Positions 36,173 through 63,355 of a DNA stretch of 64,000 nucleotides are shown in pieces. Each line of letters starts with the position of its first letter. Within the stretch, counting starts at the first letter, position 1. The stretch is taken from contig NW_003314270.1 of the NCBI RefSeq assembly GCF_000143415.4, positions 2,039,048 through 2,103,047 of the forward strand. Direction: 5' to 3'. Under the pieces are notes generated by a model. It was not told the origin of the DNA. It saw only the letters and a program-made list of their open reading frames with translations, and ran no database searches. Made by a program: the position numbers and the translations under genes. Source of the DNA: Selaginella moellendorffii. Lineage: Eukaryota; Plantae; Lycopodiophyta.

Positions 36173-39100
36173 TCACTGCTTCTTTCTTCCTCCTTTCTTC
36201 CCGGACTTTTTCTTCTTCTTGTTTGATTTCTTAGGCGCGGGCTTAGTAGCGGACGAGCAAGGCTTTGCTGGCTCACTGGAGATAGTTTCTTTGCGCTGGA
36301 GAGCATCACCGAGCACGTCTTTAAGGCAATGGTTGAATTTGGATCTGCCATAACCTAGTTTCTCTGTTGCTGGATTTGTGACAGATAGAAGTAGCCAATC
36401 CGAGTCCTGCTTCTGGTGGTCGGCATGCCTGAGAGTTTGTAAAGTTATAGATCATCCATACAAGCAAAGCAAACACTTCACTCACCTAGGATCCATAAGC
36501 TCCAACAAAGCCTCGCATTCGCACTTGAAGTCGTTCATCTTCTCCACGAGGTCGTCTCGATCGGCCTTGAGTTGCCCATCCTGACCGGCAAAGGTTCGGC
36601 CTTTCAGAATCTCAATGGCGGAAGCCATGTCCAGCACGAAACTCACCAAGTCCGCCTGCCAGGAGAGTGTTACAAAGAACCGGAGGAAAAAAGAGAAAGG
36701 AAAGTATGCAGACCTTTAGAGGACACACTTCGGAGATGAATGACGAAACGTAGCCGTCGTCTTTACAAGCCATAGTGGTAAACGCGTTTTTGGCTTCCCG
36801 GACATACTCGTCATCCTGGACCAAGTTCTCTCTGGCAACTTGCAGCTTTTTCAGCAGCCTCCAGACCACGAAAAAGCCGAGCTTCGAATCGCCAACTTTC
36901 AGGTACCATGGAGACAATGCTTCTTCTTTTGCGGGAGCCGTCATCTCTGGCTCCGGACACTCGAATGTCAGCTCGACCTCGGAAGGTTTCAGCTCCGTTG
37001 TGTCATCAACTTCCTCCTCCTCAGCATCCACAGTCTGCAGCATCATATCATCCGGTTGCTGCAGTGACGCCAGGCTGAACTTCCACGGCTCCGGCTCCAC
37101 GTTGACATAAGTCTGGAACCGAGACTTAAATCCATGCCTGAATTTGTCTCTCCGCCTCAGAAGCAGAAACTGATCGCCGCATTCAACCATGAACCGGCAG
37201 AAGAGTAGCCGGAAGTGATTGTAGTTTGCACCTGTCTCGAAGAGGCACTGCAGCCCCTGCCTCAAGCTCGGAAGAAGATGGTCCAGCGCAGAAGACTGCC
37301 GGGTCACCAAGCTCCTCAGATCTCTGAATATGTGGCTGTTCACTGCCTGGTTCTCAAACTCCATGAAAATGGTTAAGAGCACTCGAATAATCCGAAAGAC
37401 TACCTCTGACTTTGGGATATCGAGCAGCCACTTGTCCAGGCGGTATCCGAGTAGCAGAGAACTGCAAATCTTCTGAATGACTTCCAGAGAGTTTGTCCCA
37501 ACACTCTTGCAAACTTTCTCCACGGAGCAGCCCATCCTCAACATCCGCGTGTACAGAATTTCCTGCGTAGACCCCGTCATAAACTCCATAGCCAGGCTTT
37601 CCGGGAGCGTTGCCTCTACGATGTGTGATAAGCACGCAATGCTAGAAACAAGTATTCGCTCCAGCATGTAGATGAACATCGACGGAGTGATATAATGCTG
37701 GAAGCCTTCCATGCTAAAGATGTCGTGCAGCCCTTGAGCACACTGGCTCATCGGCATCGCAAAGTGGTAGCAGTACTCGTTGGCAATAAAATCCTGCCCG
37801 GGACCATTCCTCAAATAAGGCTCCAGAATCTGTAGCATAACTGTTTCTTCGACCGAATCACTCGCTGCTGTAATGTCTCTGGCAAGCGCGCCCAGGTGAG
37901 GAGTAACTTTGGGATGGTCCCGTAAGCTAACGGGAGTATTCCCTCGGCGTACGAATAAACACCGGAAAACCTCCATCCTGAGACTTCGGAGTCTTCTTTC
38001 GTGAGTTTCGGACTTCCCCAAGCTACTGACCACGTCCATAATCTTCAACACTGACAGGCAGCTCTCGGCTCCACCAGCATTGCCTGCGTGGCTTTCCAGC
38101 ACTTCACAGAAGATTGCGCTCGTCGACTCTAGCTGACCCCGCCAAAAATCTGTTGCTAGAGACAGAAACTTTTCCGTTTTCAGCTGTGCCTTTCCACTGC
38201 CGACGGTCCAGTCTCCACCCCGTTTCAGCCAGTCAACCATGCTGTCCTCCACTATGCACAGCCCGGGAAGATGGTGCCGAGTAACGCCCATAAATTCCAA
38301 GCAAGAATCCAGAAGTGCGTCGCCTTGCGGAATAATTTTCTCGATCTTTGCCAGTGCCTTCAGCAGCGAGCTTATCTTCTGGAACCAAGTGTTCCAAACA
38401 GCGACCACAAACTGCAGAGTGTTGGTCATGTCACTAGCTGTTCTCAACGGCCTGTCCAAAACCTGTAGAGTAAGAAGCCCGAGCGAAGTCGAACCTTTAG
38501 CCAACTCTAGACCTTTCTCCAAGAGCTGACGCAGCACTATGATGTTTATAGTCGGGTCGTCTTTCGCCAGCTTCCAGTTCTCGAAAACATCTGACAGCGA
38601 GAGGTCGTCGTCATCTCTTAGGACTCGAAGCTGGATTTCTGCTCGAGGATCCCCTTTTGCCATTCTGTGAGCCTCAGTGACGAGCTTTTCATCTTCCAAA
38701 GGCCGCAAAGGCCACCCCAGGTTGTTGTTCGCCCATAGAAGTTTCAGCTGCATGTGTTTGATGATTTTTCTAGCTCCTTCGGCTCGATGTCCAGCTAGTT
38801 CTAGGAACTTTGCAGCGGCTATAAGATCTCCTTTCGCTTCGGCTACCTGAGAAGCTTCTTCGTAGTTCATGTAGAAGAACTCCACTTGCATAAGCTGCTC
38901 CAGATAGTCACGCCTCTTCAAAAAGTCCCGCTTCATGGAAATGCCCGGAAACGCGTGAACAAATTTCATCATCCTGTCAACGTCCTTCTTTCTGTGATAG
39001 TGCTCCGCCGAGGTCTTCAAGAGATTCACCACGTACTTATTGCTGAGGAATGAAGCATCTTGCTGTTCTCGGTCCCGGATAAAGTTCAGTCCCTTCTCAA

Positions 39101-42100
39101 ACAGCTTTCCAGCCAGGCATGCGGATAAGCAACTCTGAAAATCTTCTACCATGGAATATGCTTCTGCTGCTTCATCATAAATCTTTGCTTGTTCAAAACA
39201 TTGGGCAGCATTTTCCCAGCGCGGCGGATTGCACTTGTCCCTGTACAACACACCTGGAAATGACAGAAACGTTAGTGATTCAAAATCGCTACGTATCACG
39301 ATTACATGAATTAATTACCAGCTTGCTTAAAGTTTTTGATCTCCGTCAAACATCTTGCCGCAGCTTCGAACTTCGCAATTCTCTCATAAAGGTTCACTGC
39401 GTCTTGTAGCTGCTGAGTCGCTATGGTGGGATTCCAGACGAGATTCTTCTCCCCATTTTGCTGGTGCAGAGCAGCTTGTGCCCACTGAGCTCTATACGAA
39501 TCATGAGCTCGTTGGTAGCACAAGACAGCCATATCATACTGGCGGTCGTTGAACATCTGTCGATAAGAACACGTAAGTTTATGAAGAGACTTGTGGAGCA
39601 TTGGAAACTAACCTGGCGTCCTCGTTGTAGCCACTCTTCCCGGGTGCTGATTCTATGGAAAGAAGAAACGAGGGATTCGTCCAGACTTCTCGACTGAACC
39701 AAGTCTTTCGTAATCCAGTAGTCTAGCATGGGCTGCTGGAAAATAAAGTCCTCGTCATATATCCAAAGACGCTGCTTGGACCTTGTAATAGCCACATATA
39801 GCTGCTTCAGTTCGTTACACAGGATGTTGTGAAGCCTTTTCTCGAACTTGGGATATCCCTGACAGCAGCAGTTCACAAGACTTGTCTCGTCGAGATAGGT
39901 GTACAGAGTTCTCCACTTAGAGCCGAAGTTCGACAGCGCAAAAAAGTTGTACAGTAGAACATCCTGAAGAGACTGTTATTTAAACCGCTAAACTTCTATC
40001 AATTGACTTACCTGGAACTCGAGACCTTTGCATTCTTCTACAGTAAGCACCAAGCTTCGCGTTCCTAGTCGCTTTAAAAGTTTCTGCTTGGATTCACCAT
40101 CTCGCACTAGAATCACCTGCTCGGCTCCAAAGTCGGACTCCTGTCCAAAACCTCCACTGTGATCAAATAGGCAGGTGATGAGGTTGTAATTCTCATCGGA
40201 CTTCACAACAACGGGCTTCTCGCCACATATCAAACTCCGCTCCGGTTCCAACTTGTCAACTGTTTCCGGAAAGAAGAACAACAGCAACTGCATAATGCTG
40301 TCCGCGAGCTCGACAACCCCTTGGTGAGTTCTAAAATTCTGCGTCAGCTGATGGATATTACATAGTGCCTGCTTCCGCAACTTCCCATCTTTCGTGATCT
40401 GCCTCCTGTCGTCAATTTCCAAAAACTCCTTGTAAAACAAACTCCTGATATCCTCGAAACGAAAGTTTACGCCTTTAGCGATTGTTTGTGCCGTGTCTCC
40501 AGCAAAAACAAATCCTTCTGCAACGTTGTCAGAAACGAACTTGAGAAGACTGATCTGAGCCAGAGTGAGGTCTTGGACCTCGTCGACGTATATAAACTGA
40601 AGCTTCGGTCCTAAAGGTTCCCCACCCTCGATCTGTCGATATAGATATCTGACGTGGTCCAATATATCATACTCGTGTCGCTGTGACTTTAGCTTCTCGT
40701 ATTGTAGAAAGAGCTCATAAATATTTTCTCGTTGGCTCTGGTCCAAAGTATAAGAAGACATATAAACGTAGTCATTTCGAGATAGCCGTCCTTTATGGCT
40801 TCGTAGAGATTCAGGCCTTCCTTTAATCGATGACATGATCTCGGTGAAGACGACTGAGGCATCGAACTTTTTGGTGAAGCTAGAGTTCAAATGCGGCCAA
40901 TAGCTTGCGGCAAAGCAATCAAAATCCACCTCTTTTCTGGGCTGAATCCGTTGAGATGTCTTCGGAGTTTCATAAGAGATATCAATGTCGTCATTTGTAT
41001 CCAAGCGATCGCTGTCGTCGCAATCTTCAACTCTAATAAAAGTTCCTTGCGCTGTCTCCATGTCCCTCCTGGCGATAAAAGGTCTCGGAACGCTGCCATC
41101 GAGCATGGTTAAAAACTTTCGATACGTGATGACGAGAGGAAATGCTTGCGGGGATATGTCGACGAAACTGTCAGGTATGTCGCTGAACAACTTTTCTTCT
41201 GCTTCCTCGTCCAGCAGTAAGCCTTTTCTCTCATACATGTCATCTTTGTTGACAGCGTTGCTTCGCTGAAGAGATCTATGATTTCAAAAGTTAAATCAAA
41301 CAAAAAGGCACTGAACTCTTACCTGCGTGTCCTTTGAAGGTGAAGCTTAATTGCCGCGCATAGTTTTGAGCTGACAGTTATCAGAGCTTGACGTACTACA
41401 GTTTGAGCCGGAGATTCACCTTCAGCGAGCCCATGAGATAGACGAAACTGTTGCTCTCGGTTAAGCAGCTTCATGGTTATAATTGTTGTCTTTCCTGTCC
41501 CCGACCTTCCGACGACGAAGGAACTCCAGGGGAACTTAACAACTTGAGATTCTTGATCTGTTACCTCGAATGGAGGATCGATTTGGCTACCGTCGGTGGC
41601 TGTTAAGAGCTGTCTAGCAATACCTGTTGATAGAGAATAAAACTTCATCAACAGTAAGCTTTCTGACACGCTTGAGTTCTCGCCAGTCGTGGTCTCCTCG
41701 TTCGCCTCAGAGCTTGCAATCTCTTTGAAGGACTTATGCCGAGCTATTTCAGCTCCAGAGCTCCATCTAGCAGGCACGGCCAGCTTCCTACAAAAAGATA
41801 CTGTGAGTCCCTTCAATATTGAGAAGTTGGGACATATGTACCCGTCCGTAAGGCGTTCGCTCGATCTTCTTAAATAAGCACCCGAGTATGTAGCACACAG
41901 GTTCTCAAGACGGCTGACAATCCTAGGAAGGCCATCAAGCTTTAGAAAATCCCAGAACTTTAGGACTTGAACTGTGCAATCGGCGTCCAAGTCAACCGTC
42001 CAAACTAGATACATTTCCATCGTAAGATGAAACTGAACGTAGTTTCGCTTCGTGGGAACGGGGGCCGTAAACGCGTGTCTCGGACGACGTCCATTGGCAA

Positions 42101-45100
42101 GGTTGAGAATGGCATTTAGCACATGCAACTTTGTCGATCCCGACGAGATGGACGTGAAACTAACTTTGAACTCTTTGCTGAAAAACACCTGCAACTAGCT
42201 CTTTGTTAGCATTACAGGACTCTAAACAGCTTGAGTCTTACCTTCCAAACGTTATTGCTAAAAAAATCTGACCGGGGATCCACGAGAGACTCCAGCTGGT
42301 GAATTTCCGCCATAGCTCTTTGAATAGTTCTCTTTACGGTAGAATCCTGTGAAGCTTCTCTATAACATTTCCTATGCCGCGCATCGTTGAGAAGCTGTCT
42401 CCAAACACCGTCACTGGATTCCAAAGTGTTGGCGCTACCGACAATACAAAGAACGTGCCTACAACAAAACTTTTCAGCTGTAAGCTGCTCGATAGGCAAG
42501 TCGAAAGCTACCTTGCGCGAGTTATTGCAACGTTCAATCGTCGATGATCTTCGAGAAAACCCAGGTAACCACCAACATTTGACCGAACGGTGGACAAGAT
42601 AATAACATCTTTTTCGCGTCCTTGAAATCCATCGACAGAACGACAATTGATGCTTAAACTTCCATGGTCCCAGGACTTAAGCCGATCGTTGATGGCCTTC
42701 ACCTGAGCAGCGTATGGAGATATTATGCCTACTTCTAATTTTTCGCCTGGAAACAAAAGTCAGTTTCAGGAGAATAAAAAGACTCCGCACCTGATTGGTG
42801 AAGCATCTTGAGGAGGTGCATCACAACAAGTACTTCCACAGCATTGCTCTTGCTGTGCTTTTCGTCTTTCGTTTCAACACCGTGCACGTTTAAAAATGTG
42901 TAAGGACCAAAGAGCTGCGATTGTGATAACTGGCCATAGAAGTCATCCACAACATTTGGCCCGTCGCAGATTGCACCTTCATAGAACTGGAAATTTGGAA
43001 ACTGACTGATAGAAGGATGCATACGGTACTGAACGTTGAGCATTATACTAGGATGTCCGAGGAGCTGCAGCCTCTCAAAAAGACTTCTGCCATAGCTGTA
43101 GTCCTGAGCAATCTGGGAAACCACGAGAAGCGAAATTTCAGATGAAACCAGGAGGCTATTGACCAAACAAAGTTACCTTGCTTATAACAGTCGCTGGTAA
43201 TTGTTTGTGATCCCCAACTAATACCAGCTGCTTCACGTTTTGTAGACCCATCACAATTGCTGTCTCTGCTTCCACAAGCTGGCCCGCTTCATCGATAACC
43301 GCTGTATAAAAATGTCGAGAGGTATTCTGCACAATTCTCATGCCTGCAGAGGAGACCGTGCAGCAGACTACAGACGCGTGCCGCAGAAGTTCTTCACCAG
43401 TAGGAATTTTACCAGGCGGGTACGTCACAAAATCCATGTTTGTCTTCAACAGGTTCAGAAGAGCTGCTGCGGCCCCTGAAGTAGAACTGACGTAGTTCAG
43501 AACTTCAGAGTCTTCGCGAAATCGTCCAAAGGCTGCATTGATCTCGGTGACGTGGTGTCTGGCTCCAAGGATATCAGTAGACTTGAGAAAGGTGGACGGC
43601 AGGTCGTTGCACACTAAGTCAATGCTACTCAGCATCTGATCCCCAAGAAACGTCATTCTCTCCCTGGAGAAGTCCAGGAAGCTCTCGGCAGGCTCGTCGG
43701 GCTTCTTATCCTGCTTATACTGCCTATAGCGTTCTTCTGCATTCTCCAGAAAGTCCACGACAGAAAGAACTTTCTGTTGCCACCCGCAAGCAGTAGCGAG
43801 GACAGTCGCTAATCGTTCTTCTCTGCTCTGAAGGAAAACAGCGTCAAGGATCTCGTTGTCATCCACTTGAAGATTTTCTTTGTTGCCCACCAACACGACG
43901 TCACGAGGACATACGGTCCTTGTACACCCGATAAAAGAGGAGGGCTGCTTTGTTATCGACGTAAAAAGCCTCACCACAACCTCAGTTATGGCGGCATTTG
44001 TCGGAGCAGACATAAGTATCCGCTTGCTGGAGCCGGCAAGCACAGAGATCAGAGCTATGAGCATCGATGTCTTTCCTGTTCCGGGCGGTCCTTGGATCAG
44101 TCTCACATAAGGCTTCTGTTCCCTCTTCAGAGCGATAACAGTCCTCGAGACAGCTTCCATTTGAGAATCGTTGAGCTTAAACCACCTTGCGCAACTAATC
44201 TCGGAGCTTGTCATACCTTCGACGTCATCTATCTCCGGTTCACCCTGCAAAACAAAAACGCGTCTTAACTAGATATGTAAACGAAGCATGAAGTTTCTTA
44301 CCGAGTTTGCTTGGAGAACTTCTTGAAATATAGGATATTGACCTGCTAGAGCCAGTGAAGGACGTTTCAGAGCCTCCCAAACTCGCATTCCAGTGGCGAG
44401 GGAGCTCAAGTAGACAGCATACCACGGTCGATTGGTTTCAAGGAAGGGGTCGTACTCGGAACTGTAGATAGGAGCGTATACGTCGACTTTGAGCTCGTCA
44501 CTGTCCATGTCGTCGCCAGCGATAATAAGAGCAAGAGTATAAAACTCGCCACTATCTCGCAGAATCGTCAGGCAGTCTGGCTCTGCTGTTGTCAGGAGAA
44601 CCAAATCCTTCGGCTTTAGTATGTCTTTCGAAATTTGCATCTTAAACCTTCTGATCTTGTCATCGCCATCCCGACCACGGACTTCCTTGCCCATCTCGAC
44701 AAGAACGCAAGGCAACTCGTTGATCATCTCAAGACTTTGCTGCAAGGCGGCGCGGGTCTCTTCAAGTAGAAGAGGTCGGAATACGCTCAGATAGTTTTTC
44801 AAATCCGGAAACTCCAAGGGAATTTTGTCAACCTGGCGAGAGCAAGACAGTCACTCGAAGCCAATCACCAAGAGCAAAAAGAAGAAAACCAACCTGATTG
44901 ACGAGCAAGCTTTCGTTGTTTATGTTGTCCAAAGACCATGCCAGAACTTGGCGTGAAAGAGTTTGCTCCTCCGCGGCCATTCCTGGATTGCGGAAAGAAA
45001 CCTCTCTCCCAGCGAACTTTGGCTCCAGCTTCTTGAGAAACTCCTTGGAGGCCTCGACAACCTCCACGGGGATGCGCTTCCCAAGCTCCCTAAACACCCA

Positions 45101-45448
45101 AAGCCTCCGGTTGTCCAAGGTGTACCACGCATTCTCGTGGTAGAACACGCGAATGGGTGGAACTTCTTCCACCCCGACCGAGCCATCTCTCAGCTTGGCC
45201 AGCAGCCCTTCCAGGCTGCCCTCCGCCGCGACCTGCGCAAAGCTCTGCGAAGATCCTTCCTTCTCAGCGCCTTTCCTTAGCAAAGCCACACTCTTTTCAA
45301 ACACCGGCCGCTGTGAGAACCTGATGGATTTCGGATCCATCCACTCGATATGCTGCGATTTCCCTGGCGCCGACTCGCAGGAGCTCATCCCTCTGCCGAT
45401 AATCGCATCCGGCGCCTCCTGATCACTAGAATATTCACCTTGCTCCAT
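36173..45448 (-). CDS. Giant TRANK1/LBA1-type dual helicase: ParB-like + Sen1/UPF1-like SF1B helicase + RelE-like + UvrD-like SF1A helicase + TPR
   Basis: Helicase 1: [54 protein letters not shown]. Helicase 2: [48 protein letters not shown]-like AAQCFEQA repeats and a Lys-rich C-terminal tail. ORF blocks join through short GT-AG introns. Confidence 0.9.
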
Positions 45449-45718
45449 CGCCTCTAAGTACGATCGTCCCAGAACCGCAAGAACCCAGGTGCGATCGGCC
45501 TAGAACTGGAAGAGGATCGATCGGCACACCTGCATTTACCGATTTCGTAGAGGCATCGCGATCGATCACGCAGAGCCCTAGAATATGAGCGCCGCGAGCG
45601 GCAAAGCCGTAAGAATTTAAAACGAGCACCAAAATTTTTACATTTCCTATCAACGTCCATTCATATAGGCCGTCCCGACCTATACGAGCGTGAAACCCCG
45701 GCCACCGTAAGATTCTCT

Positions 45719-46307
45719 CTAGCGACCATCGCCACCGTCCACCAAAGCGTTCTCTTGGAACTCCTCTTGCCTCTCCTTTTGGAGATATATCTCCAGCTGC
45801 TCGCGCTGGTTTTTTACGTTGTTCCTCGCAGTTCCAACCTGTGAAATTCCAGTTTTTGATTCGATAAAACTCCAAGAAAAAAAGTAAAACGAGAGAACGA
45901 GAGAGAAAAGATCGGTTTTCTTTCGCTACCTGTTCGTTGAGCTGATCGATCAACACAGACTGCGATGCCATCTTAAACTTGAGCTTGTCGATCTGAGACG
46001 TAAGCTCGTCTCTCTCCTTCTCGGCCCTGGATTTTGCCTGAGCAATTCGAGATCTAGTGAGAAAAACTAAAGAGAGCAACCGAGAAAACTAGAAACCAAC
46101 CTCCGTGACGTGCTTGCAAAGGTCCTCCAAGCTCATCTCGTTCGCTCTCACTTTCCGGATGAACGCCTCTCTCTCGCGCAGCAATTCCTCCACCGCTTCC
46201 AGTGCTCGTCCTGGATCATCCTCCGGGTCTTCCTCTCTTTCTTCTTCCTCCCAAAGTTTCTCTTCGTCATCCTCGAGCGCCACCGCCGCGTCTAGCCGCT
46301 CCTCCAT
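45719..46307 (-). CDS. Small acidic coiled-coil protein (~144 aa, 3 exons), function unknown
   Basis: Spliced MEERLDAAVALEDDEEKLWEEEE..LCKHVTE/AKSRAEKERDELTSQIDKLK..QLNEQ/VGTARNNVKNQREQLEIYLQKERQEEFQENALVDGGDGR*, with canonical in-frame GT-AG introns. Confidence 0.65.
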
Positions 46308-46385
46308 CTCCCTGTAGCCAAAACTGTTTGAAACAGTTCCTTTCCACGCCACGGTGTAATCGACCGGTAAAGCATATTCCCAATG

Positions 46386-49368
46386 TCACGAGGCCTCGAG
46401 AGAGGCCAAGTTGGACATAAAGGTTGATCCAACTGTCGATCCGGCTTTGAAGAACACGGCTGGAAGTCCAAGCGGTGCATCGATCCAGGCACTCGAGGAT
46501 TGCTCCGCAGAGCCGTAGTTCCTGTTCGTCCAGACGTGCACCCACACGTCTCCCGCTGGAAAATAAGCACGGACCTTTCGTTTGCCTCTGTTGAGCACTG
46601 GAACGACGAGAAGCTCCGAGCCAACTAGAAATTGCTCGTAAGTGATTCTTTGCACGAACTCGTCCTGTGGATAGTGAAGGAAGAGGTGCCTCACGACGGG
46701 CATACCTCGACTTGCCGCTTCCTAGATTGCAAAAAAAATCATTCCTTCCAAGCGTAAGCGCGAATCTATGCAAGGAGTTATACGCACCTTGACAAGTTCC
46801 TTGCGGTAAAACTTCCACGCTTTGAAAATCCTTGCGCACCTAGCAAAGTGTTGCAAAGTTCGCGCATTCGTGTAAAACTGAGAGTTCGCTCCAGGATCGT
46901 TTCCCTGGAAAAGGAAAGTTTTGCAAACCATTTCTAAGAACCTCTTTCTCGTACCTCGTGCGTTCTGAAAATCACAGAGAAGGCGTTGAGCTCCATCCAG
47001 CGCATGAGAAGCTCCTCACTTCGCACGTACTTTAGAAATGGAAAATTCACCGTTGTGTAGCCGCCAATATCACTGTGATTCAGAGAGTATCCGGAGATGC
47101 CACTGCTCAGCAGTCCAACAACAGCGCTTTTTATGCCATCGTTCCTCTGCCAGCTGACCATTTGATCTCCTTCCCAGAACAGGGTCGACCACTTCGGACT
47201 TCTCATAAACCCCGCTCGCATGAAAAACACAAGTTTGTCGATGTCACCGTTTTGTAACTTGTGCTCTTGCTCCCATTCTTCGACGACCTCCCTGTTGAGC
47301 TGAGCCCACAGCTCGGGAAATCGATTGTGAAGGAGCGCTGGATTCTCGTCTGTTGTACACAGGCTTGTCAGGAACCATCCAGTAAAACATCCACAAAACT
47401 ACCTGAGTGAATGACCGAGTCGAAAGGTAATGCTTCGCCAAAGTCCGCCATCCACCCCGAAACTCCAGTACTGATCATGTCTCTCAGTATCTCTTTCAGC
47501 CAGCAACGAGCTTTGGGATTTGTAAGATCAATGACCCCTGCGTCAAAACTCGTGTTCGTAATCATGTAGACGCCTCCACCAGGCTTACGCACCAAGAAAC
47601 TCTCAGCTAAAGCTTCTTGCAATAGATTTCTTCGTTTCGCTTCCTTGCTCTCAACCTTTACATTCAAGGTAAGACATTGGCATCGTAAAGGAAACTCTGA
47701 AAAGAGACTTACACAAGCGAGGAGAGGATTGCAGTACGTCATTGTTCGAATGCCCTGGGATTTGAGCTCTTGCACAAGCTCCCCCCATCCTTGGTAATGA
47801 TCCGTGTCTGCTTCCCAGTTCCACCAAAGTTGCCATCCTATGCTTGTTTTCCTTTGGCCAACCCAGTCCTGTGCACAAAGAAAACGAAATCTTTAACAGA
47901 AGTCGGAGGTGAAAAAAAAAATGGAGAAAAGAAATACGAACTTGCAACCAGAAGGCAGCTATAGGAATGTCGTGCTTCTTAAGTTCAGCATGTATTTTCT
48001 TCACAGCGTTCGTTCCACCTTGCATACCAATGACAGCCCCTTGATGAATCCAGTCCGGAAGCTCTCGCATTCTTCCAATGCTTTCAGTATAGCGCATAAG
48101 CAGCTCTGCGGGTGTCTGTCCATGTAAGATCCGGCCTTCCATCGTTCCCGAATGTACCTGAAAATCACTCTCATCTTAAATTCAGAAAAGGAGAGACAAA
48201 AACAGAACTTACTTGTATTTGAACTCGATCGTGACGACGCAGATCAAAGACGGAGTACTCGTAGTTTTCAAGGAACAAACACCGCATATCCGAGGTCATG
48301 TAATATGGCGATGGTGCATAAGTTGTGTGCCAGCTTCCTCCAGATCTAGAAAGAGAAATTCCAGAAACAAGTTGAAACTTTTGAAGCATACCTGTAAGAT
48401 AGAATGTTTGCTGCAGCGGTAATAGGCTGGTCACCTCTTCCGACGCCTTGCTCCTGAACGAGGATCGGCACTCTCCGTCCTTTCAGATCTAAGCAAGAGA
48501 ACTGCTCGCCAAATCCAAAGAATCGTTCGTTTCTGTGAGAGATGTACGTCAGCTGGACCCTGTTAAAATCCGGAACTTCGTCAATATTGGCTTGCTCAAC
48601 CGGTCGAACTCGTAGCGAGCCATAGCTTCTCCGTCTAAAAATTGATCGTTCCGTCCAAATCCTCTCTAGCACGTCAAAATCACTTTTAAGTTCGGCTTGG
48701 AGCTCGTGATAATAGTTCTCCACTTGTTTTGGTGGCGCGATCCAGAACGGCTTATCAAGCTTGATCGTAAAACCAAGGTGGTGAGGCCTCTTCTCTGTGA
48801 AGCAAAGCGTGTAGCAGACAGCAACACTGTTGGAGCAGTCTTTCCTACGAAAGAAAGGCCGCGGAGAATTTAACGCTGTTTCTGCCGAGAACAAAGTCCC
48901 AGTGATCACCACTGACGAGCCCCCACTCACGGACAACGGGGTCCCATCTCCATCTTTTTGGTTTGACAACGAAACGTGATCATCCGCTAGCTGACTTTGA
49001 GCGCTTGAGCCCGCCAAAGAGAGGATCTTGTCAACACTTTGGTGCTTACAAATTAGCTTGACCTCGTCCTGGATCCCAAACGATCCCCGAAACTCCTCCA
49101 CCGTTTCCACTCCCAGAGCCGCGGTGACGAAAGAAAACCCAGGAGCTGTGGACCAAAGGCTTCTACCTGGCTCGCTGCGATGCTCCACGCTTAAAAATCC
49201 CCCCTTGTCCGGGTTCCAGCAAACCAGGAATCCATCGCCCACCGGAAGCACCACCACCTCCCCAAGAGCCTCGCGATCGAAGAACAAATTCCCCTGGACG
49301 AAACCCATCGATTTGGGCTGCCGCGGGAAGGGAGAATTCACCATTCTCCTCCTCTCTTGCTGATCCAT
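46386..49368 (-). CDS. Glycoside hydrolase family 31, YihQ/sulfoquinovosidase-like
   Basis: GFGEQFSCLDLKGRRVPILVQEQGVGRG, WLQDWVGQR, nucleophile GWMADFGEALP, WEGDQ, HSDIGGYT, RTHEGN and LVAP-like LLVVPV. Start approximate. Confidence 0.92.
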
Positions 49369-61903: not shown

Positions 61904-63355
61904 ATGGATGCGATTACTAAGGTGAATTCTGAATCTCTTCAAGATTGCAATCAACCAAGCAGCAGTAAAGTTGTTCAATATGCCTTCCATGTCGTTCGGC
62001 CTAAGAAAGTTCCACCACCTTCACCTCATTTTCTCTCAAGCATTGATCTTTGCTACAGCAAGCCAGAATTCTCCACACTTGTGCTCTTCTTCAAGGATTG
62101 CTTCTCGCCTTCCACAGGAGCTAAGAGTCTTGTAGACAGCCTCAGGTCTTCACTTTCCAAGGTGCTAGTATTTTATCCTGTTCTCGCTGGAAGGCTCAGG
62201 GTAAACGAGAGTGGAAGGATCGAGGTAAACATGAACGGTCAAGGTGTCCACTTTGTGGAGTCAAAGGTGGACTCGAGCTTCCAAGATTGGCAAGACATAC
62301 GCCAGTGTCCACTAGACATAGATTTATCACTCGACACCGGAGTTGTCAACCCCAGCGATGTTCCTCTTATCAAGTTCCACTTGACGCAATTTCACTGTGG
62401 GAGCATTGCCATAGCAGTCCATTTTTTGCACATCGTTTTGGACGGCTCCAGCCTCTACAACTTCCTCAACGCATGGGCTAAAGTTCACCGTGGCAGCACT
62501 TTATTTTGTGAGAGCTTTGGAAGAGAACGGGCGCTCTTGGCTCGGGATCCTCCAAAGGTGGACGCACCGGTGCCTTTCATCATTGACGCTGCTGCACGCG
62601 ACAAGCAAATTGATCCAAGCAACATCACGCCTTGCAATCTGGTGACACTTCGAATGGAGCAAGCTGCTATAGACGCTTGCAAGCGAGAAGCTCAAACCGG
62701 CGCCTTTGCATACAACGGTGGAAAAGCTACGGGCTTTGAGGCCGTGTTGTCCCTGCTGTGGTCGTCCATACTACGTGCACAGGGAGTCCCTCAACACCTT
62801 GACACGGCTATCTTGTTCTCTATCAACCTGCGGGGCCAGAAGCTAGCAGTCGTCCCCCAAAATTATTTCGGCAATGCCGTTGCCAATTGTCAGGTTCATG
62901 CGTCTCGAGCTGGCGACATAGTTGCTTCGGACTTATCGTATGCTGCGCATCTCATACACAAAGCAAAGATCTCCTGCAATAGAGCGTCGGTGCAGAGCAT
63001 GCTGGACTGGCTGGAGCTGAATTCTGCTCATCTTCACAAGGAACTTCACTGGAGGCGGGGAATCATGTCCACGACCATGACCAATTTCCACATGTATGGT
63101 CTCGATTTTGGGTGGCGAGGAGGAGCACTTTCCCAACTTTGCTTTCTGCCCAGCAAAGTTCCACCACACATGCCATTTGTTGCAATGCTGCCCTCGCCAA
63201 GACCCAAGTCAATAGAGATTGTCATTGGGCTGCATCACCAGGACAGAGAAGTGTTGCTACAAGACCATCTCTTCACACGCTATTTCTCAGCGTCAGAGAT
63301 TAAGCTGTGGACTGGAGATCGCATACGTAGAGCATTAAGGAGAGTCCCAAAGTAG
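61904..63355 (+). CDS. BAHD acyltransferase, intronless
   Basis: LSKVLVFYPVLAGRL, HXXXD motif HIVLDG, NYFGN and DFGWR (DFGWG variant). Upstream TATAAAAA. Confidence 0.94.
   Translation: MDAITKVNSESLQDCNQPSSSKVVQYAFHVVRPKKVPPPSPHFLSSIDLCYSKPEFSTLVLFFKDCFSPSTGAKSLVDSLRSSLSKVLVFYPVLAGRLRVNESGRIEVNMNGQGVHFVESKVDSSFQDWQDIRQCPLDIDLSLDTGVVNPSDVPLIKFHLTQFHCGSIAIAVHFLHIVLDGSSLYNFLNAWAKVHRGSTLFCESFGRERALLARDPPKVDAPVPFIIDAAARDKQIDPSNITPCNLVTLRMEQAAIDACKREAQTGAFAYNGGKATGFEAVLSLLWSSILRAQGVPQHLDTAILFSINLRGQKLAVVPQNYFGNAVANCQVHASRAGDIVASDLSYAAHLIHKAKISCNRASVQSMLDWLELNSAHLHKELHWRRGIMSTTMTNFHMYGLDFGWRGGALSQLCFLPSKVPPHMPFVAMLPSPRPKSIEIVIGLHHQDREVLLQDHLFTRYFSASEIKLWTGDRIRRALRRVPK

What the first reader, a model, noticed from the sequence alone, without database searches (positions are those of the whole stretch)
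44990..45349. Polymorphic-toxin-type ParB/Sulfiredoxin-like domain fused in-frame to the helicase N-terminus
The ORF reads [13 protein letters not shown]...[52 protein letters not shown]. It continues without stop or intron into [16 protein letters not shown], the usual start of plant Sen1-like helicases. The pattern 'P..IRFSQ / PPIRV / Y.LDNRRL / IPV' matches the ParB/Srx fold (the GxxR motif here as DNRR), as I recall it from bacterial Rhs-type toxin tips. I do not recall this domain on angiosperm homologues, so it may be a lineage-specific or horizontally acquired effector (NTPase, nuclease or nucleotide-depleting).
Basis: partly seen in the sequence, partly recalled or inferred. Interest (0 to 1): 0.85.

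Follow-up and report, generated by a model that had tools for sequence, protein, structure and literature searches.

The report
Toxin-type ParB-like domain on helicase
The first exon of a giant Selaginella double-helicase gene encodes a small ParB/sulfiredoxin-fold domain of the "Tox-ParBL1" type otherwise found at the tips of bacterial Rhs toxins; the fusion is old (charophyte algae, liverwort, moss, lycophyte), missing from about 95 seed-plant homologues, and the domain family was described in 2012, so this is a real but only moderately new finding.

Summary
Window 44990-45349 (minus strand) is residues 34-153 of a 185-codon first exon (45448-44894). RNA contigs show it spliced in frame to the Sen1-like/UvrD-like helicase gene of Selaginella moellendorffii.

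- **Fold:** an AlphaFold model (core pLDDT above 90) matches only ParB/Srx-superfamily structures. VIA-align Z is 7.8 to 4.8 for sulfiredoxin, Atu1540, SerK, PadC, KorB, SbnI and a pNOB8-like ParB. The next unrelated chain among 48,161 scores Z 2.4.
- **Toxin link:** sequence searches tie it to C-terminal tips of bacterial RHS and pretoxin-HINT toxins.
- **Family:** its motifs (IRF-S-Q, PPIRV, LDNRRL) fit Tox-ParBL1 (Zhang et al. 2012), already reported from eukaryotes including plants. No Pfam or NCBIfam model detects it.

- It is not Selaginella-specific and not a recent transfer.
- The same fusion occurs in Calypogeia, Ceratodon and Closterium.
- In a rough domain tree the streptophyte domains group together, apart from the bacterial toxins.
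- About 95 seed-plant homologues lack it.

Function is inferred only: a nucleotide-triphosphate-binding or -hydrolysing module, by analogy to ParB, Srx and the ToxB ATPase toxin.

The scan noted the same domain on another piece of this genome (s1-363757).

The parts
44894..45448 (-). Exon 1 coding sequence (185 codons, ATG at 45448) of the giant helicase gene. It is identical to the N-terminus of S. moellendorffii EFJ31304.1 / XP_024528141.1.
   Evidence: ORF list and sequence. Identity to P0151/P0154. Splice joint in RNA contig X1.
44978..45379 (-).
   Evidence: hmmsearch of the family profile on the six-frame window gives iE 2.4e-37 and a single significant hit (the profile includes this sequence). 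AF2 model. Fold searches.
45311..45325 (-). IRFSQ motif (residues 42-46) on the first strand. It holds the conserved N-terminal Ser/Thr that defines ParBL1, plus a Gln that is nearly invariant in the 26-sequence alignment A2.
   Evidence: Alignments A1/A2/A4. Family definition in PMC3482391.
45233..45295 (-). Streptophyte-specific loop (residues about 52-72) inserted between the first strand and the L..L..G helix. It is low-confidence in the model, and two of the five haplotype amino-acid differences lie here.
   Evidence: pLDDT below 50 for model residues 28-36 and 38-48. Gap in bacterial sequences. Haplotype differences.
45146..45160 (-). PPIRV strand motif (residues 97-101). From general knowledge it resembles the PPIDV of sulfiredoxin and the PI.V of ParB.
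   Evidence: P and I at least 90% conserved in 129 sequences. Strand E75-80 in the model.
45101..45118 (-). LDNRRL motif (residues 111-116) at the start of the helix that follows the beta-hairpin. It occupies the place of GERR in ParB, GCHR in Srx and GNHR in ToxB, so it is the predicted phosphate-binding P-motif.
   Evidence: D, N, R, R at least 90% conserved and L invariant. Helix H89-98 in the model. P-motif equivalence described for ToxB and ParB. The placement here is inferred from the order of secondary-structure elements.
44978..44980 (-). Met157, the alternative start used by RefSeq model XP_024524470.1 of the other haplotype.
   Evidence: P0153 begins MAAEEQ.
44912..44944 (-). [11 protein letters not shown] (residues 169-179), the conserved N-terminal motif of the plant DUF6469/AAA_11 helicases. 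It follows the ParBL1 domain closely in every streptophyte member.
   Evidence: Alignment A4. Seed-plant N-termini.
44833..44893 (-). Intron 1 (61 nt, GT..AG).
   Evidence: Joint 44828/44890 (cut +4) in RNA contig X1. Sequence.
36612..44832 (-). Remaining exons of the same gene: DUF6469, AAA_11/AAA_12 (Sen1/Upf1-like SF1 helicase), a UvrD-like helicase, and a long C-terminal region that carries no Pfam match.
   Evidence: ORFs. Pfam on the 2679-aa model P0154.

Best explanation
Shown: window 44978-45379 (minus strand) encodes a roughly 130-residue domain with the ParB/sulfiredoxin fold. It is the in-frame N-terminus of a protein of roughly 2,700-2,900 residues in the public gene models (2,679 and 2,870 aa), with DUF6469, a Sen1-like SF1 helicase and a UvrD-like helicase, from Selaginella moellendorffii. 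Its features fit the Tox-ParBL1 family of Zhang et al. 2012. This is a divergent ParB/Srx clade whose bacterial members are the C-terminal warheads of RHS and pretoxin-HINT polymorphic toxins.

Shown: streptophytes inherited the domain vertically, already joined to this helicase. The fusion is present in Closterium, a liverwort, a moss and this lycophyte. It is absent from the seed-plant homologues sampled.

Inferred: the intact S/T-Q, PPIR and DNRR motifs form a nucleotide-triphosphate pocket like those of ParB (GERR), sulfiredoxin (GCHR) and the CdiA toxin ToxB (GNHR). The domain therefore most likely binds, and probably hydrolyses or transfers phosphate from, an NTP. It would act either as the catalytic effector arm or as a nucleotide-gated switch of a nucleic-acid-surveillance helicase. 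The substrate and the biological role are not established.
For: Coding and spliced:
- The ORF runs without a stop. The intron 44893-44833 is confirmed by an RNA contig.
- Stranded RNA reads lie on 44876-45277 at about the same low depth as the helicase exons.
- The exon is intact in both haplotypes. All 5 amino-acid differences lie outside the conserved core.
- Public models EFJ31304.1, EFJ34295.1 and XP_024528141.1 start at the same Met1.

Fold:
- AF2 mean pLDDT is 76.6, with the core blocks at 92-95 and a beta-alpha-beta-beta-alpha-beta order.
- Foldseek's top 50 are all ParB/Srx (AtSrx E 3.2e-4; ParB, Noc, SbnI, SerK, PadC, KorB).
- VIA-align gives Z 7.8 (rmsd 3.3, 87 aligned) to 6ky4. In the unbiased search of 48,161 chains the ten best are all ParB/Srx and the next chain scores Z 2.4.

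Family:
- Whole-library E-values to toxin tips are 1.4e-7 to 5e-6 (P0033, P0036, P0067, P0087).
- P0067 is an RHS core plus this domain. P0087 and Streptomyces L016 are RHS plus PT-HINT plus this domain, and L016 is followed by a small DUF7660 ORF.
- 68 of the 149 best representatives carry the domain at the extreme C-terminus. 139 of 149 contain a DN[RK]R string, the form the family motif takes.
- The published definition (ParB fold; N-terminal S/T; [NT][RT][RT], mostly RR; HINT/RHS contexts; eukaryotes including viridiplantae) matches.

Phyletic pattern:
- The profile hits Calypogeia P0155, Ceratodon P0157, Closterium P0039 and a eukaryotic helicase protein P0049 of unidentified species. It hits none of about 95 seed-plant homologues.
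- The junction to the helicase motif is conserved.
- The streptophyte group has support 96/66 and the bacterial toxin clade 98/91.

Mechanistic analogy: ToxB, a ParB-fold CdiA toxin, is an ATPase that depends on the Arg of its GNHR motif.
Against: - No Pfam, NCBIfam or PDB sequence profile detects the domain. The fold assignment therefore rests on a predicted model with middling Z scores (below 8).
- The type member of Tox-ParBL1 (Neisseria NGK_2271) could not be fetched, so membership rests on matching the published definition and contexts.
- No biochemical data exist for any ParBL1 domain.
- RNA coverage of exon 1 is thin (about 1x) and the transcription start is not mapped. One RefSeq model starts at Met157.
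- Eukaryotic relatives occur as tandem repeats (Mya, Nezara) or with WW or ubiquitin domains. This fits a binding or regulatory role as well as an enzymatic one.
- The tree rests on 130 columns and its bootstrap had not converged.
Confidence: 0.8

Rival explanations
1. The domain-coding stretch is a 5' leader. Translation starts at Met157 (44980), so the helicase is made without the ParB-like domain, as in seed plants.
For: RefSeq model XP_024524470.1 of the other haplotype starts at MAAEEQ. Seed-plant homologues begin only about 20-35 residues before the WS..I.NE motif. Met157 has a purine at -3 and G at +4. The transcription start is not mapped and reads over exon 1 are sparse.
Against: - Residues 25-160 are conserved at 35-48% identity, with the invariant motifs kept, in liverwort, moss, Closterium and many transcript- or contig-derived fragments. 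All of these run in frame into the helicase motif.
- The ORF is open in both haplotypes and the amino-acid changes avoid the core.
- RNA reads and contigs cover 45010-45411, upstream of Met157.
- Three in-frame AUGs (Met1, Met21, Met37) precede Met157, and Met1 has a good context (G at -3, G at +4). A scanning ribosome would start upstream.
Confidence: 0.07
2. The domain is translated but is not an enzyme or toxin-like effector. It is a ParB-fold scaffold used only for protein-protein contacts, dimerisation or nucleotide sensing that regulates the helicase.
For: Canonical ParB uses the same fold as a CTP-gated dimerisation switch. Eukaryotic relatives occur as tandem arrays and with WW or ubiquitin domains. 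An N-terminal position on a large motor protein is typical of regulatory domains.
Against: The very residues that are invariant in the bacterial toxin tips (S/T-Q, PPIR, DNRR, the downstream Lys) are retained in the plant proteins. In toxins the domain must itself be harmful. ToxB shows that a lone ParB-fold domain can be a catalytic ATPase toxin.
Confidence: 0.25
3. The domain was recently transferred from a bacterium into the Selaginella lineage and captured by the helicase gene.
For: Bacterial polymorphic-toxin tips are clear homologues. GC content over 45000-45499 (0.576) is higher than in neighbouring bins.
Against: - The closest relatives are streptophyte proteins with the same fusion (E 6e-22 to 1e-11). 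Bacterial hits start near 1e-7.
- The streptophyte sequences, including Klebsormidium and Closterium, group together and apart from the bacterial clade.
- The junction, and probably the intron position, is shared.
Confidence: 0.03

Closest known systems
Tox-ParBL1 toxin domain family (Zhang, de Souza, Anantharaman, Iyer, Aravind 2012, Biol Direct 7:18; type member Neisseria gonorrhoeae NGK_2271)
   Same: Predicted ParB fold. Conserved N-terminal Ser/Thr (IRF-S-Q here). An [NT][RT][RT] motif that is mostly RR (DNRR here). Bacterial members at the tips of RHS and HINT polymorphic toxins. Reported from eukaryotes including Viridiplantae.
   Different: Here the domain is N-terminal, not a C-terminal warhead. 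It is fused to a DUF6469/Sen1-like plus UvrD-like double helicase and carries an extra loop of roughly 20 residues. There are no secretion or immunity partners. The helicase fusion and its loss in seed plants are not mentioned in the parts of the paper's text that I read or word-searched; figure 8C could not be viewed.
ToxB, the ParB-CTPase-fold toxin at the C-terminus of CdiA (bioRxiv 10.64898/2026.05.05.722872)
   Same: A stand-alone ParB-fold domain without an HTH or C-terminal dimerisation domain, used as a toxin. Its GxxR-type P-motif (GNHR) corresponds to DNRR here. It gives experimental proof that such a domain binds and hydrolyses ATP and is toxic, including in plant cells.
   Different: ToxB was found with Pfam PF02195, so it is classical ParB-like. 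The Selaginella domain and its relatives give no PF02195 hit even at E<=10 for the window protein or E<=1 for ten relatives. The sequence clade differs and the activity here is untested.
Sulfiredoxin (Srx; PDB 6ky4, 2rii, 1xw4)
   Same: Best structural match (Z 7.8, 87 residues, rmsd 3.3). Similar domain size. From general knowledge, a PPI(D/R)V strand followed by a hairpin and a helix that starts with the phosphate-binding motif.
   Different: Srx's catalytic Cys in FGGCHR is replaced (LDNRRL), so sulfinic-acid reductase chemistry is not expected. Sequence identity is only 16-18%. Zhang et al. regard ParBL1 as an acquisition by eukaryotes independent of Srx.
Canonical ParB/Noc/KorB CTP-gated DNA clamps (PDB 6sdk, 7bm8, 7ol9, 8qa8)
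   Same: Same N-terminal nucleotide-binding fold, with an arginine pair at the P-motif position (GERR against DNRR).
   Different: No HTH DNA-binding domain, no C-terminal dimerisation domain, no ParA-binding motif and no recognisable Box III. Not detected by ParB Pfam models.
Other ParB/Srx-fold enzymes: free serine kinase SerK, SbnI, PadC, Osa, Atu1540
   Same: Structural matches at Z 5.5-7.0, and Z 3.0 for Osa. They show that the fold supports kinase, ATPase and DNase chemistry.
   Different: Different motifs and extra domains. No sequence-level similarity was detected.

Membership tests
ParB/Srx fold superfamily | Three-dimensional fold (strand, helix, beta-hairpin, helix, strand core) matching solved ParB/Srx structures. 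| tested here: met
   The AF2 model core has pLDDT above 90. Foldseek's top 50 are all from this superfamily. In the VIA-align wide search the ten best of 48,161 chains are all ParB/Srx (Z 7.8-3.0) and the next chain scores Z 2.4. This rests on a predicted structure, not a solved one.
ParB/Srx fold superfamily | Phosphate-binding GxxR-type motif at the N-terminus of the helix after the hairpin. | tested here: met
   DNRR (residues 112-115) lies at the start of model helix H89-98, directly after strands E75-80 and E83-86. Each of the four residues is at least 90% conserved across 129 sequences. The first position is D rather than G. Equivalence to GERR, GCHR and GNHR is inferred from the order of elements and.
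ParB/Srx fold superfamily | Detectable by sequence profiles (Pfam ParB_N PF02195 / ParBc_2, or HHpred to 1vz0). | tested here: not met
   No Pfam, NCBIfam or PDB-sequence hit for the protein, its relatives or the family profile. A profile-profile (HHpred) comparison was not run. Zhang et al. report 93% probability to 1vz0 for ParBL1. The ESM feature search gave ParBc_2 and ParB_N clusters only at 0.77.
Tox-ParBL1 (Zhang et al. 2012) | Conserved N-terminal Ser/Thr that classical ParB domains lack. | tested here: met
   IRF[ST]Q is conserved: S45 here, T in Calypogeia, and S or T in most of the aligned bacterial toxin tips. Definition.
Tox-ParBL1 (Zhang et al. 2012) | [NT][RT][RT] motif, mostly N-R-R, equivalent to DGHHR of classical Tox-ParB. 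| tested here: met
   N113-R114-R115. 139 of the 149 best representatives contain DN[RK]R.
Tox-ParBL1 (Zhang et al. 2012) | Homologues form C-terminal toxin modules of polymorphic toxins (RHS or FilH repeats, pretoxin HINT) followed by immunity genes. | tested here: met
   P0067 and P0133 have an RHS core plus the domain. P0087, P0128 and L016 have PT-HINT plus the domain. A small DUF7660 ORF follows in L016. 68 of 149 representatives carry the domain at the extreme C-terminus. The immunity function of the downstream ORF was not tested.
Tox-ParBL1 (Zhang et al. 2012) | Phyletic range: Actinobacteria, Proteobacteria, Firmicutes, Euryarchaea and many eukaryotes including Viridiplantae and Metazoa. 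| tested here: met
   47 genome loci, mainly Actinomycetota, plus Methanolobus, Chlamydiota and Bacteroidota. Eukaryotes found: Mya, Nezara, Yihiella, Rhabdomonas, Klebsormidium, Closterium, Calypogeia and Ceratodon.
Tox-ParBL1 (Zhang et al. 2012) | Direct sequence or profile link to the type member NGK_2271 (Neisseria MafB-type toxin). | not tested
No Neisseria locus was recovered with the narrow pattern LDNRRL[WVH]AF.
Canonical ParB (CTP-dependent DNA clamp) | HTH DNA-binding domain, C-terminal dimerisation domain and a ParA-binding motif, together with a Pfam PF02195 match. | tested here: not met
   The domain is followed within about 25 residues by the helicase N-terminal motif. Pfam on the whole 2679-aa protein shows only DUF6469 and helicase-type P-loop NTPase families (AAA_11/AAA_12, UvrD and related), with no ParB or HTH family.
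Sulfiredoxin | Catalytic cysteine in the F-G-G-C-H-R signature (established knowledge of the family). | tested here: not met
   The corresponding motif is L-D-N-R-R-L, with no cysteine.

The most novel reading that the evidence does not exclude
ParBL1 plus an AAA_11/AAA_12 SF1 helicase may be an ancient, recurrent functional unit. It is seen in streptophytes from Closterium to Selaginella. A separately branching ParBL1 domain is also fused to this helicase type in a bacterium, beside Dot/Icm type IVB secretion genes. In this reading the toxin-derived ParB-fold NTPase is the executioner or nucleotide-gated clamp of a nucleic-acid-sensing immune helicase. This would be a plant-lineage innate-defence device that seed plants discarded.
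Probability: 0.25. Interest if true: 0.75.

Novelty: new member of a known kind. Interest (0 to 1): 0.45.

Why it matters
- **Annotation:** the domain family has no Pfam or NCBIfam model. This protein and its bryophyte and algal orthologues are therefore annotated only as "UvrD-like helicase" or "hypothetical". Recognising the domain corrects that annotation. It also argues for Met1 over the Met157 RefSeq model.
- **Evolution:** this is a clear case of a bacterial polymorphic-toxin warhead domesticated early in the green lineage. It stayed welded to one helicase through streptophyte algae, bryophytes and lycophytes, and is absent from the seed-plant homologues sampled.
- **Function:** no ParBL1 domain has been characterised biochemically. 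The recent demonstration that a classical ParB-fold CdiA toxin is an ATPase makes the plant domain a tractable, non-secreted representative for testing what this clade does. It also offers a handle on the unknown function of the giant plant Sen1/UvrD double helicases.

Tried and rejected
- Pfam and NCBIfam scans of the exon-1 protein, of the 120-aa core and of about 35 relatives: no family covers the domain.
- phmmer of the protein and hmmsearch of the 129-sequence profile against PDB sequences: only chance hits at E>1.
A six-sequence alignment then worked. Its single pattern is narrow, so the 47 loci under-sample the family and no Neisseria locus appeared.
- The word-indexed search for full-length proteins carrying residues 1-185 found only Selaginella and Ceratodon. 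Its sensitivity is limited. Calypogeia and Closterium came from the exhaustive search.
- The supplement of Zhang et al. held as text has no ParBL1 or Selaginella entry, and figure 8C cannot be viewed. I could not check whether the helicase architecture was drawn there.
- Literature searches for DUF6469 and for ParB-like + helicase + Selaginella returned nothing.
- Comparing the two haplotypes gave 3 synonymous and 5 non-synonymous differences in exon 1 (pN/pS about 0.48). That is too few for a test.
- Recent HGT into Selaginella was rejected on hit ranking and the tree.
- A second weak profile hit at 62216-62374 (+), iE 0.039, was taken as chance.
- No complex prediction was run because no binding claim is made.
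Full report
**1. What is in the sequence**

On the minus strand an ORF runs from ATG 45448 to 44828 (206 aa). The quoted motifs sit where stated:
- IRFSQ at residues 42-46
- PPIRV at residues 97-101
- LDNRRL at residues 111-116
- IPV at residues 126-128
- Met157 at 44980

The frame continues into [11 protein letters not shown] and ends at a GT. An RNA-derived contig (run X1) joins 44890-45042 to 44649-44828, which fixes a 61-nt GT..AG intron at 44893-44833. Exon 1 is therefore exactly 185 codons, and exon 2 continues in frame (VDKIPLEF...).

Three stranded RNA-seq runs place their first mates on the + strand, as expected for a minus-strand gene. Two of the three (X22, X23) cover 44876-45277 at about 0.3-1.6x. 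That is the same order as the helicase exons further downstream. X1 contigs also cover 45278-45411.

The upstream minus-strand gene is a GH31 glycosidase, expressed 10-30 times more strongly. Its assembled transcript ends near 45642. The helicase transcript must therefore start between about 45642 and 45411. The start itself is not mapped.

**2. Whose gene it is**

The exon-1 protein is identical to the N-terminus of Selaginella moellendorffii EFJ31304.1 (2870 aa) and RefSeq XP_024528141.1 (2679 aa). It is 97% identical to EFJ34295.1 (2806 aa) on the other haplotype scaffold.

Pfam on the 2679-aa model gives DUF6469, AAA_11/AAA_12 (a Sen1/Upf1-like SF1 helicase) and UvrD-helicase/UvrD_C. Nothing is assigned to the first 250 residues.

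The RefSeq model for the other haplotype (XP_024524470.1, 2588 aa) starts at Met157.

The two haplotypes are 98% identical over the gene. In exon 1 they differ at 3 synonymous and 5 non-synonymous sites. All five amino-acid changes lie in the N-terminal tail or in the poorly conserved loop (residues 21, 25, 34, 62, 69). None lies in residues 70-153. That is too few sites for a formal test.

**3. Is it a real domain?**

No Pfam, NCBIfam or PDB-sequence model matches it.

An exhaustive phmmer search of 1.84 billion representatives returned 355 proteins at E<=1e-3 and 17 at E<=1e-10. Aligning 129 of them gives the consensus DP..IRF.Q.SI...F..G...L..G.....DIPPIRV....G..YSLDNRRLW.F..AG..IPV. L92 is invariant. 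L62, P73, I75, D88, N89, R90, R91 and F95 are at least 90% conserved (query numbering; add 24 for protein numbering). The Selaginella protein keeps every one of these.

**4. Fold**

AlphaFold2 with that alignment gives mean pLDDT 76.6. The core blocks reach 92-95. The only low-confidence segment is a loop (model residues 28-48) that bacterial members lack. The order of elements is two short strands (one carrying IRFSQ), a helix (L..LL.KL..G), a hairpin (IRVFYH / WYTL), a helix starting at NRRL, a strand (IPVEV) and a helix.

- Foldseek against the PDB lists only ParB/Srx-superfamily proteins in its top 50. These include Arabidopsis and human sulfiredoxin, ParB, Noc, SbnI, free serine kinase, PadC, KorB, Atu1540 and Spo0J. 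The best E-value is 3.2e-4.
- VIA-align re-scoring gives Z 7.8 (87 residues, rmsd 3.3) for 6ky4, and 7.3-7.0 for Noc, human Srx, ParB and Atu1540.
- The search independent of Foldseek covered 48,161 representative chains and found only 12 with Z>=2. The ten best are all ParB/Srx proteins, and the next chain scores Z 2.4.

The absolute Z values are middling. The exclusivity of the list and the placement of the DNRR motif make the assignment secure for a predicted model. That motif sits where ParB has GERR, Srx has GCHR and ToxB has GNHR.

**5. 'Polymorphic-toxin type'**

The bacterial homologues are toxin tips:
- P0067: RHS repeats, an Rhs-associated core (539-623) and the domain at 843-932.
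- P0087: RHS, dockerin, pretoxin-HINT (738-869) and the domain at 921-985.
- P0128: PT-HINT plus the domain.
- P0133: Rhs core plus the domain.
- Streptomyces longispororuber (L016): a protein of more than 1100 aa with RHS repeats, a YD shell, PT-HINT and this domain at its C-terminus, followed by a 110-aa DUF7660 ORF in the usual immunity-gene position.

A pattern scan of GTDB genomes gave 47 loci. Most are Actinomycetota, with others in Bacteroidota, Chlamydiota, Desulfobacterota, Lentisphaerota and the archaeon Methanolobus. Of the 149 best representatives, 68 carry the domain at the extreme C-terminus and 139 contain DN[RK]R.

This is the family that Zhang et al. 2012 named Tox-ParBL1. They describe it as follows:
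- [quoted passage not shown]
- found with RHS, FilH and HINT
- interpreted as an acquisition by eukaryotes independent of sulfiredoxin

All the listed features were checked here and met. The one untested link is to the type protein NGK_2271, which I could not fetch. The 2012 paper is the only one in the library that uses the name in this sense.

**6. Distribution and history of the fusion**

The best hits after Selaginella are 160-280-aa fragments whose sequences continue, as here, into ...VL.WS..D..NE.L.VNKV and then stop. They look like first-exon products of orthologous genes.

Full-length fused proteins:
- Calypogeia fissa (liverwort, 2620 aa)
- Ceratodon purpureus (moss, 2920 aa)
- Closterium sp. 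(Zygnematophyceae, 2217 aa partial; domain at 1060-1203, upstream of AAA_11)
- P0049, an intron-containing eukaryotic gene for a 1155-aa protein with ParBL1, DUF6469, AAA_11 and AAA_12

Klebsormidium has the domain at the C-terminus of a 555-aa protein in which Pfam finds no helicase domain.

I then fetched 100 homologues of the helicase N-terminal region. About 95 are from seed plants: angiosperms from Tasmannia to grasses, and Cryptomeria. None hits the domain profile (best E 0.12, off-position). Their N-termini start only about 20-35 residues before the WS motif.

A maximum-likelihood tree of 54 domains groups all streptophyte sequences together (support 96/66). They are separate from a well-supported bacterial toxin clade (98/91). 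The tree is rough (130 columns, bootstrap not converged). It agrees with the hit ranking: streptophytes at 1e-22 to 1e-11, and bacteria from 1e-7.

The domain was therefore already joined to this helicase before land plants arose. It was inherited vertically into lycophytes and is missing from the seed plants sampled. It is not a Selaginella novelty and not a recent transfer.

A bacterial protein (P0045, 1519 aa) also combines ParBL1 with AAA_11/AAA_12, next to DotI/DotH type IVB secretion genes. Its domain branches apart from the streptophyte group. The pairing with this helicase type may therefore have arisen more than once.

**7. How it probably works**

No ParBL1 domain has been studied experimentally, so this part is inference. 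Members of the fold bind a nucleotide triphosphate through the motif at the start of the post-hairpin helix:
- ParB, Noc and KorB use CTP as a dimerisation switch.
- Sulfiredoxin, SerK and SbnI transfer the gamma-phosphate of ATP.
- Osa is an ATPase/DNase.
- The CdiA toxin ToxB is a monomeric ATPase. Its toxicity and ATP binding need the Arg of GNHR, and it also kills plant cells.

The plant domain keeps the toxin clade's invariant residues. I therefore take NTP binding, with hydrolysis or phosphotransfer, as the most likely activity. It would serve as an effector or nucleotide-gated module on a helicase that probably surveys nucleic acids. A purely structural or regulatory role remains a serious rival (about 0.25). 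Initiation at Met157 is unlikely (about 0.07).

**8. Verdict**

The family and its presence in plants have been known since 2012. The additions here are the helicase architecture, its phyletic pattern and the lack of any database model. Interest is moderate.

The same domain was flagged by the scan on another piece of this genome (s1-363757), presumably the other haplotype.

Noticed in passing
window 45449-45642 (minus strand): Two short upstream ATGs lie between the 3' end of the upstream GH31 transcript (about 45642) and the helicase ATG. One at 45556 opens a 6-codon ORF and one at 45535 an 11-codon ORF. If the transcript starts upstream of them they would be uORFs.
   Followed up: no
window 45642-47000 (minus strand): The upstream GH31 glycosidase gene is expressed 10-30 times more strongly than the helicase. 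Its introns are confirmed at about 45837-45927, 46037-46099, 46721-46786 and 46904-46953. About eleven positions show two alleles in the RNA reads, consistent with heterozygous or haplotype variation. The 144-aa gene model called between the two genes on the other haplotype (L050 649-1230) overlaps this gene's 3' exons and is probably spurious.
   Followed up: partly
P0153 (XP_024524470.1) versus P0154 (XP_024528141.1): RefSeq annotates the two haplotype copies of the same gene with different starts (Met157 versus Met1), although the upstream ORF is intact in both.
   Followed up: yes
L001 748-5307: A bacterial 1519-aa protein carries a ParBL1 domain (about 391-464) and an AAA_11/AAA_12 helicase. 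It lies immediately upstream of OmpA-like, DotI/IcmL and DotH/IcmK type IVB secretion genes. It may be a secreted effector or a component of a conjugative element.
   Followed up: partly
L016 22-3333 and 3258-3590: A Streptomyces longispororuber toxin (RHS, YD shell, PT-HINT, ParBL1) is followed by a 110-aa DUF7660 ORF. DUF7660 may be an immunity family for ParBL1 toxins. Zhang et al. list SUKH and Imm44 as the immunity proteins for this family.
   Followed up: partly
P0008, P0011 (Mya arenaria); P0021 (Nezara viridula); P0035: Animal proteins consist of tandem arrays of ParBL1 domains, from 2-3 up to 8 copies. P0108 (the euglenid Rhabdomonas) has six WW domains plus ParBL1. P0029 has ubiquitin plus ParBL1.
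   Followed up: no
P0002, P0004-P0007, P0009, P0013, P0014 and others: Fragmentary gene calls from public assemblies all end a few residues after ...VNKV. This is where the Selaginella intron 1 begins, which suggests a conserved intron position across streptophytes.
   Followed up: no
window 62216-62374 (+): A weak second match to the ParBL1 profile (iE 0.039, score 2.4). It is probably chance.
   Followed up: no
window 45000-45499: GC content is 0.576 over the domain-coding part of exon 1, against 0.45-0.50 in most other bins of this gene.
   Followed up: no
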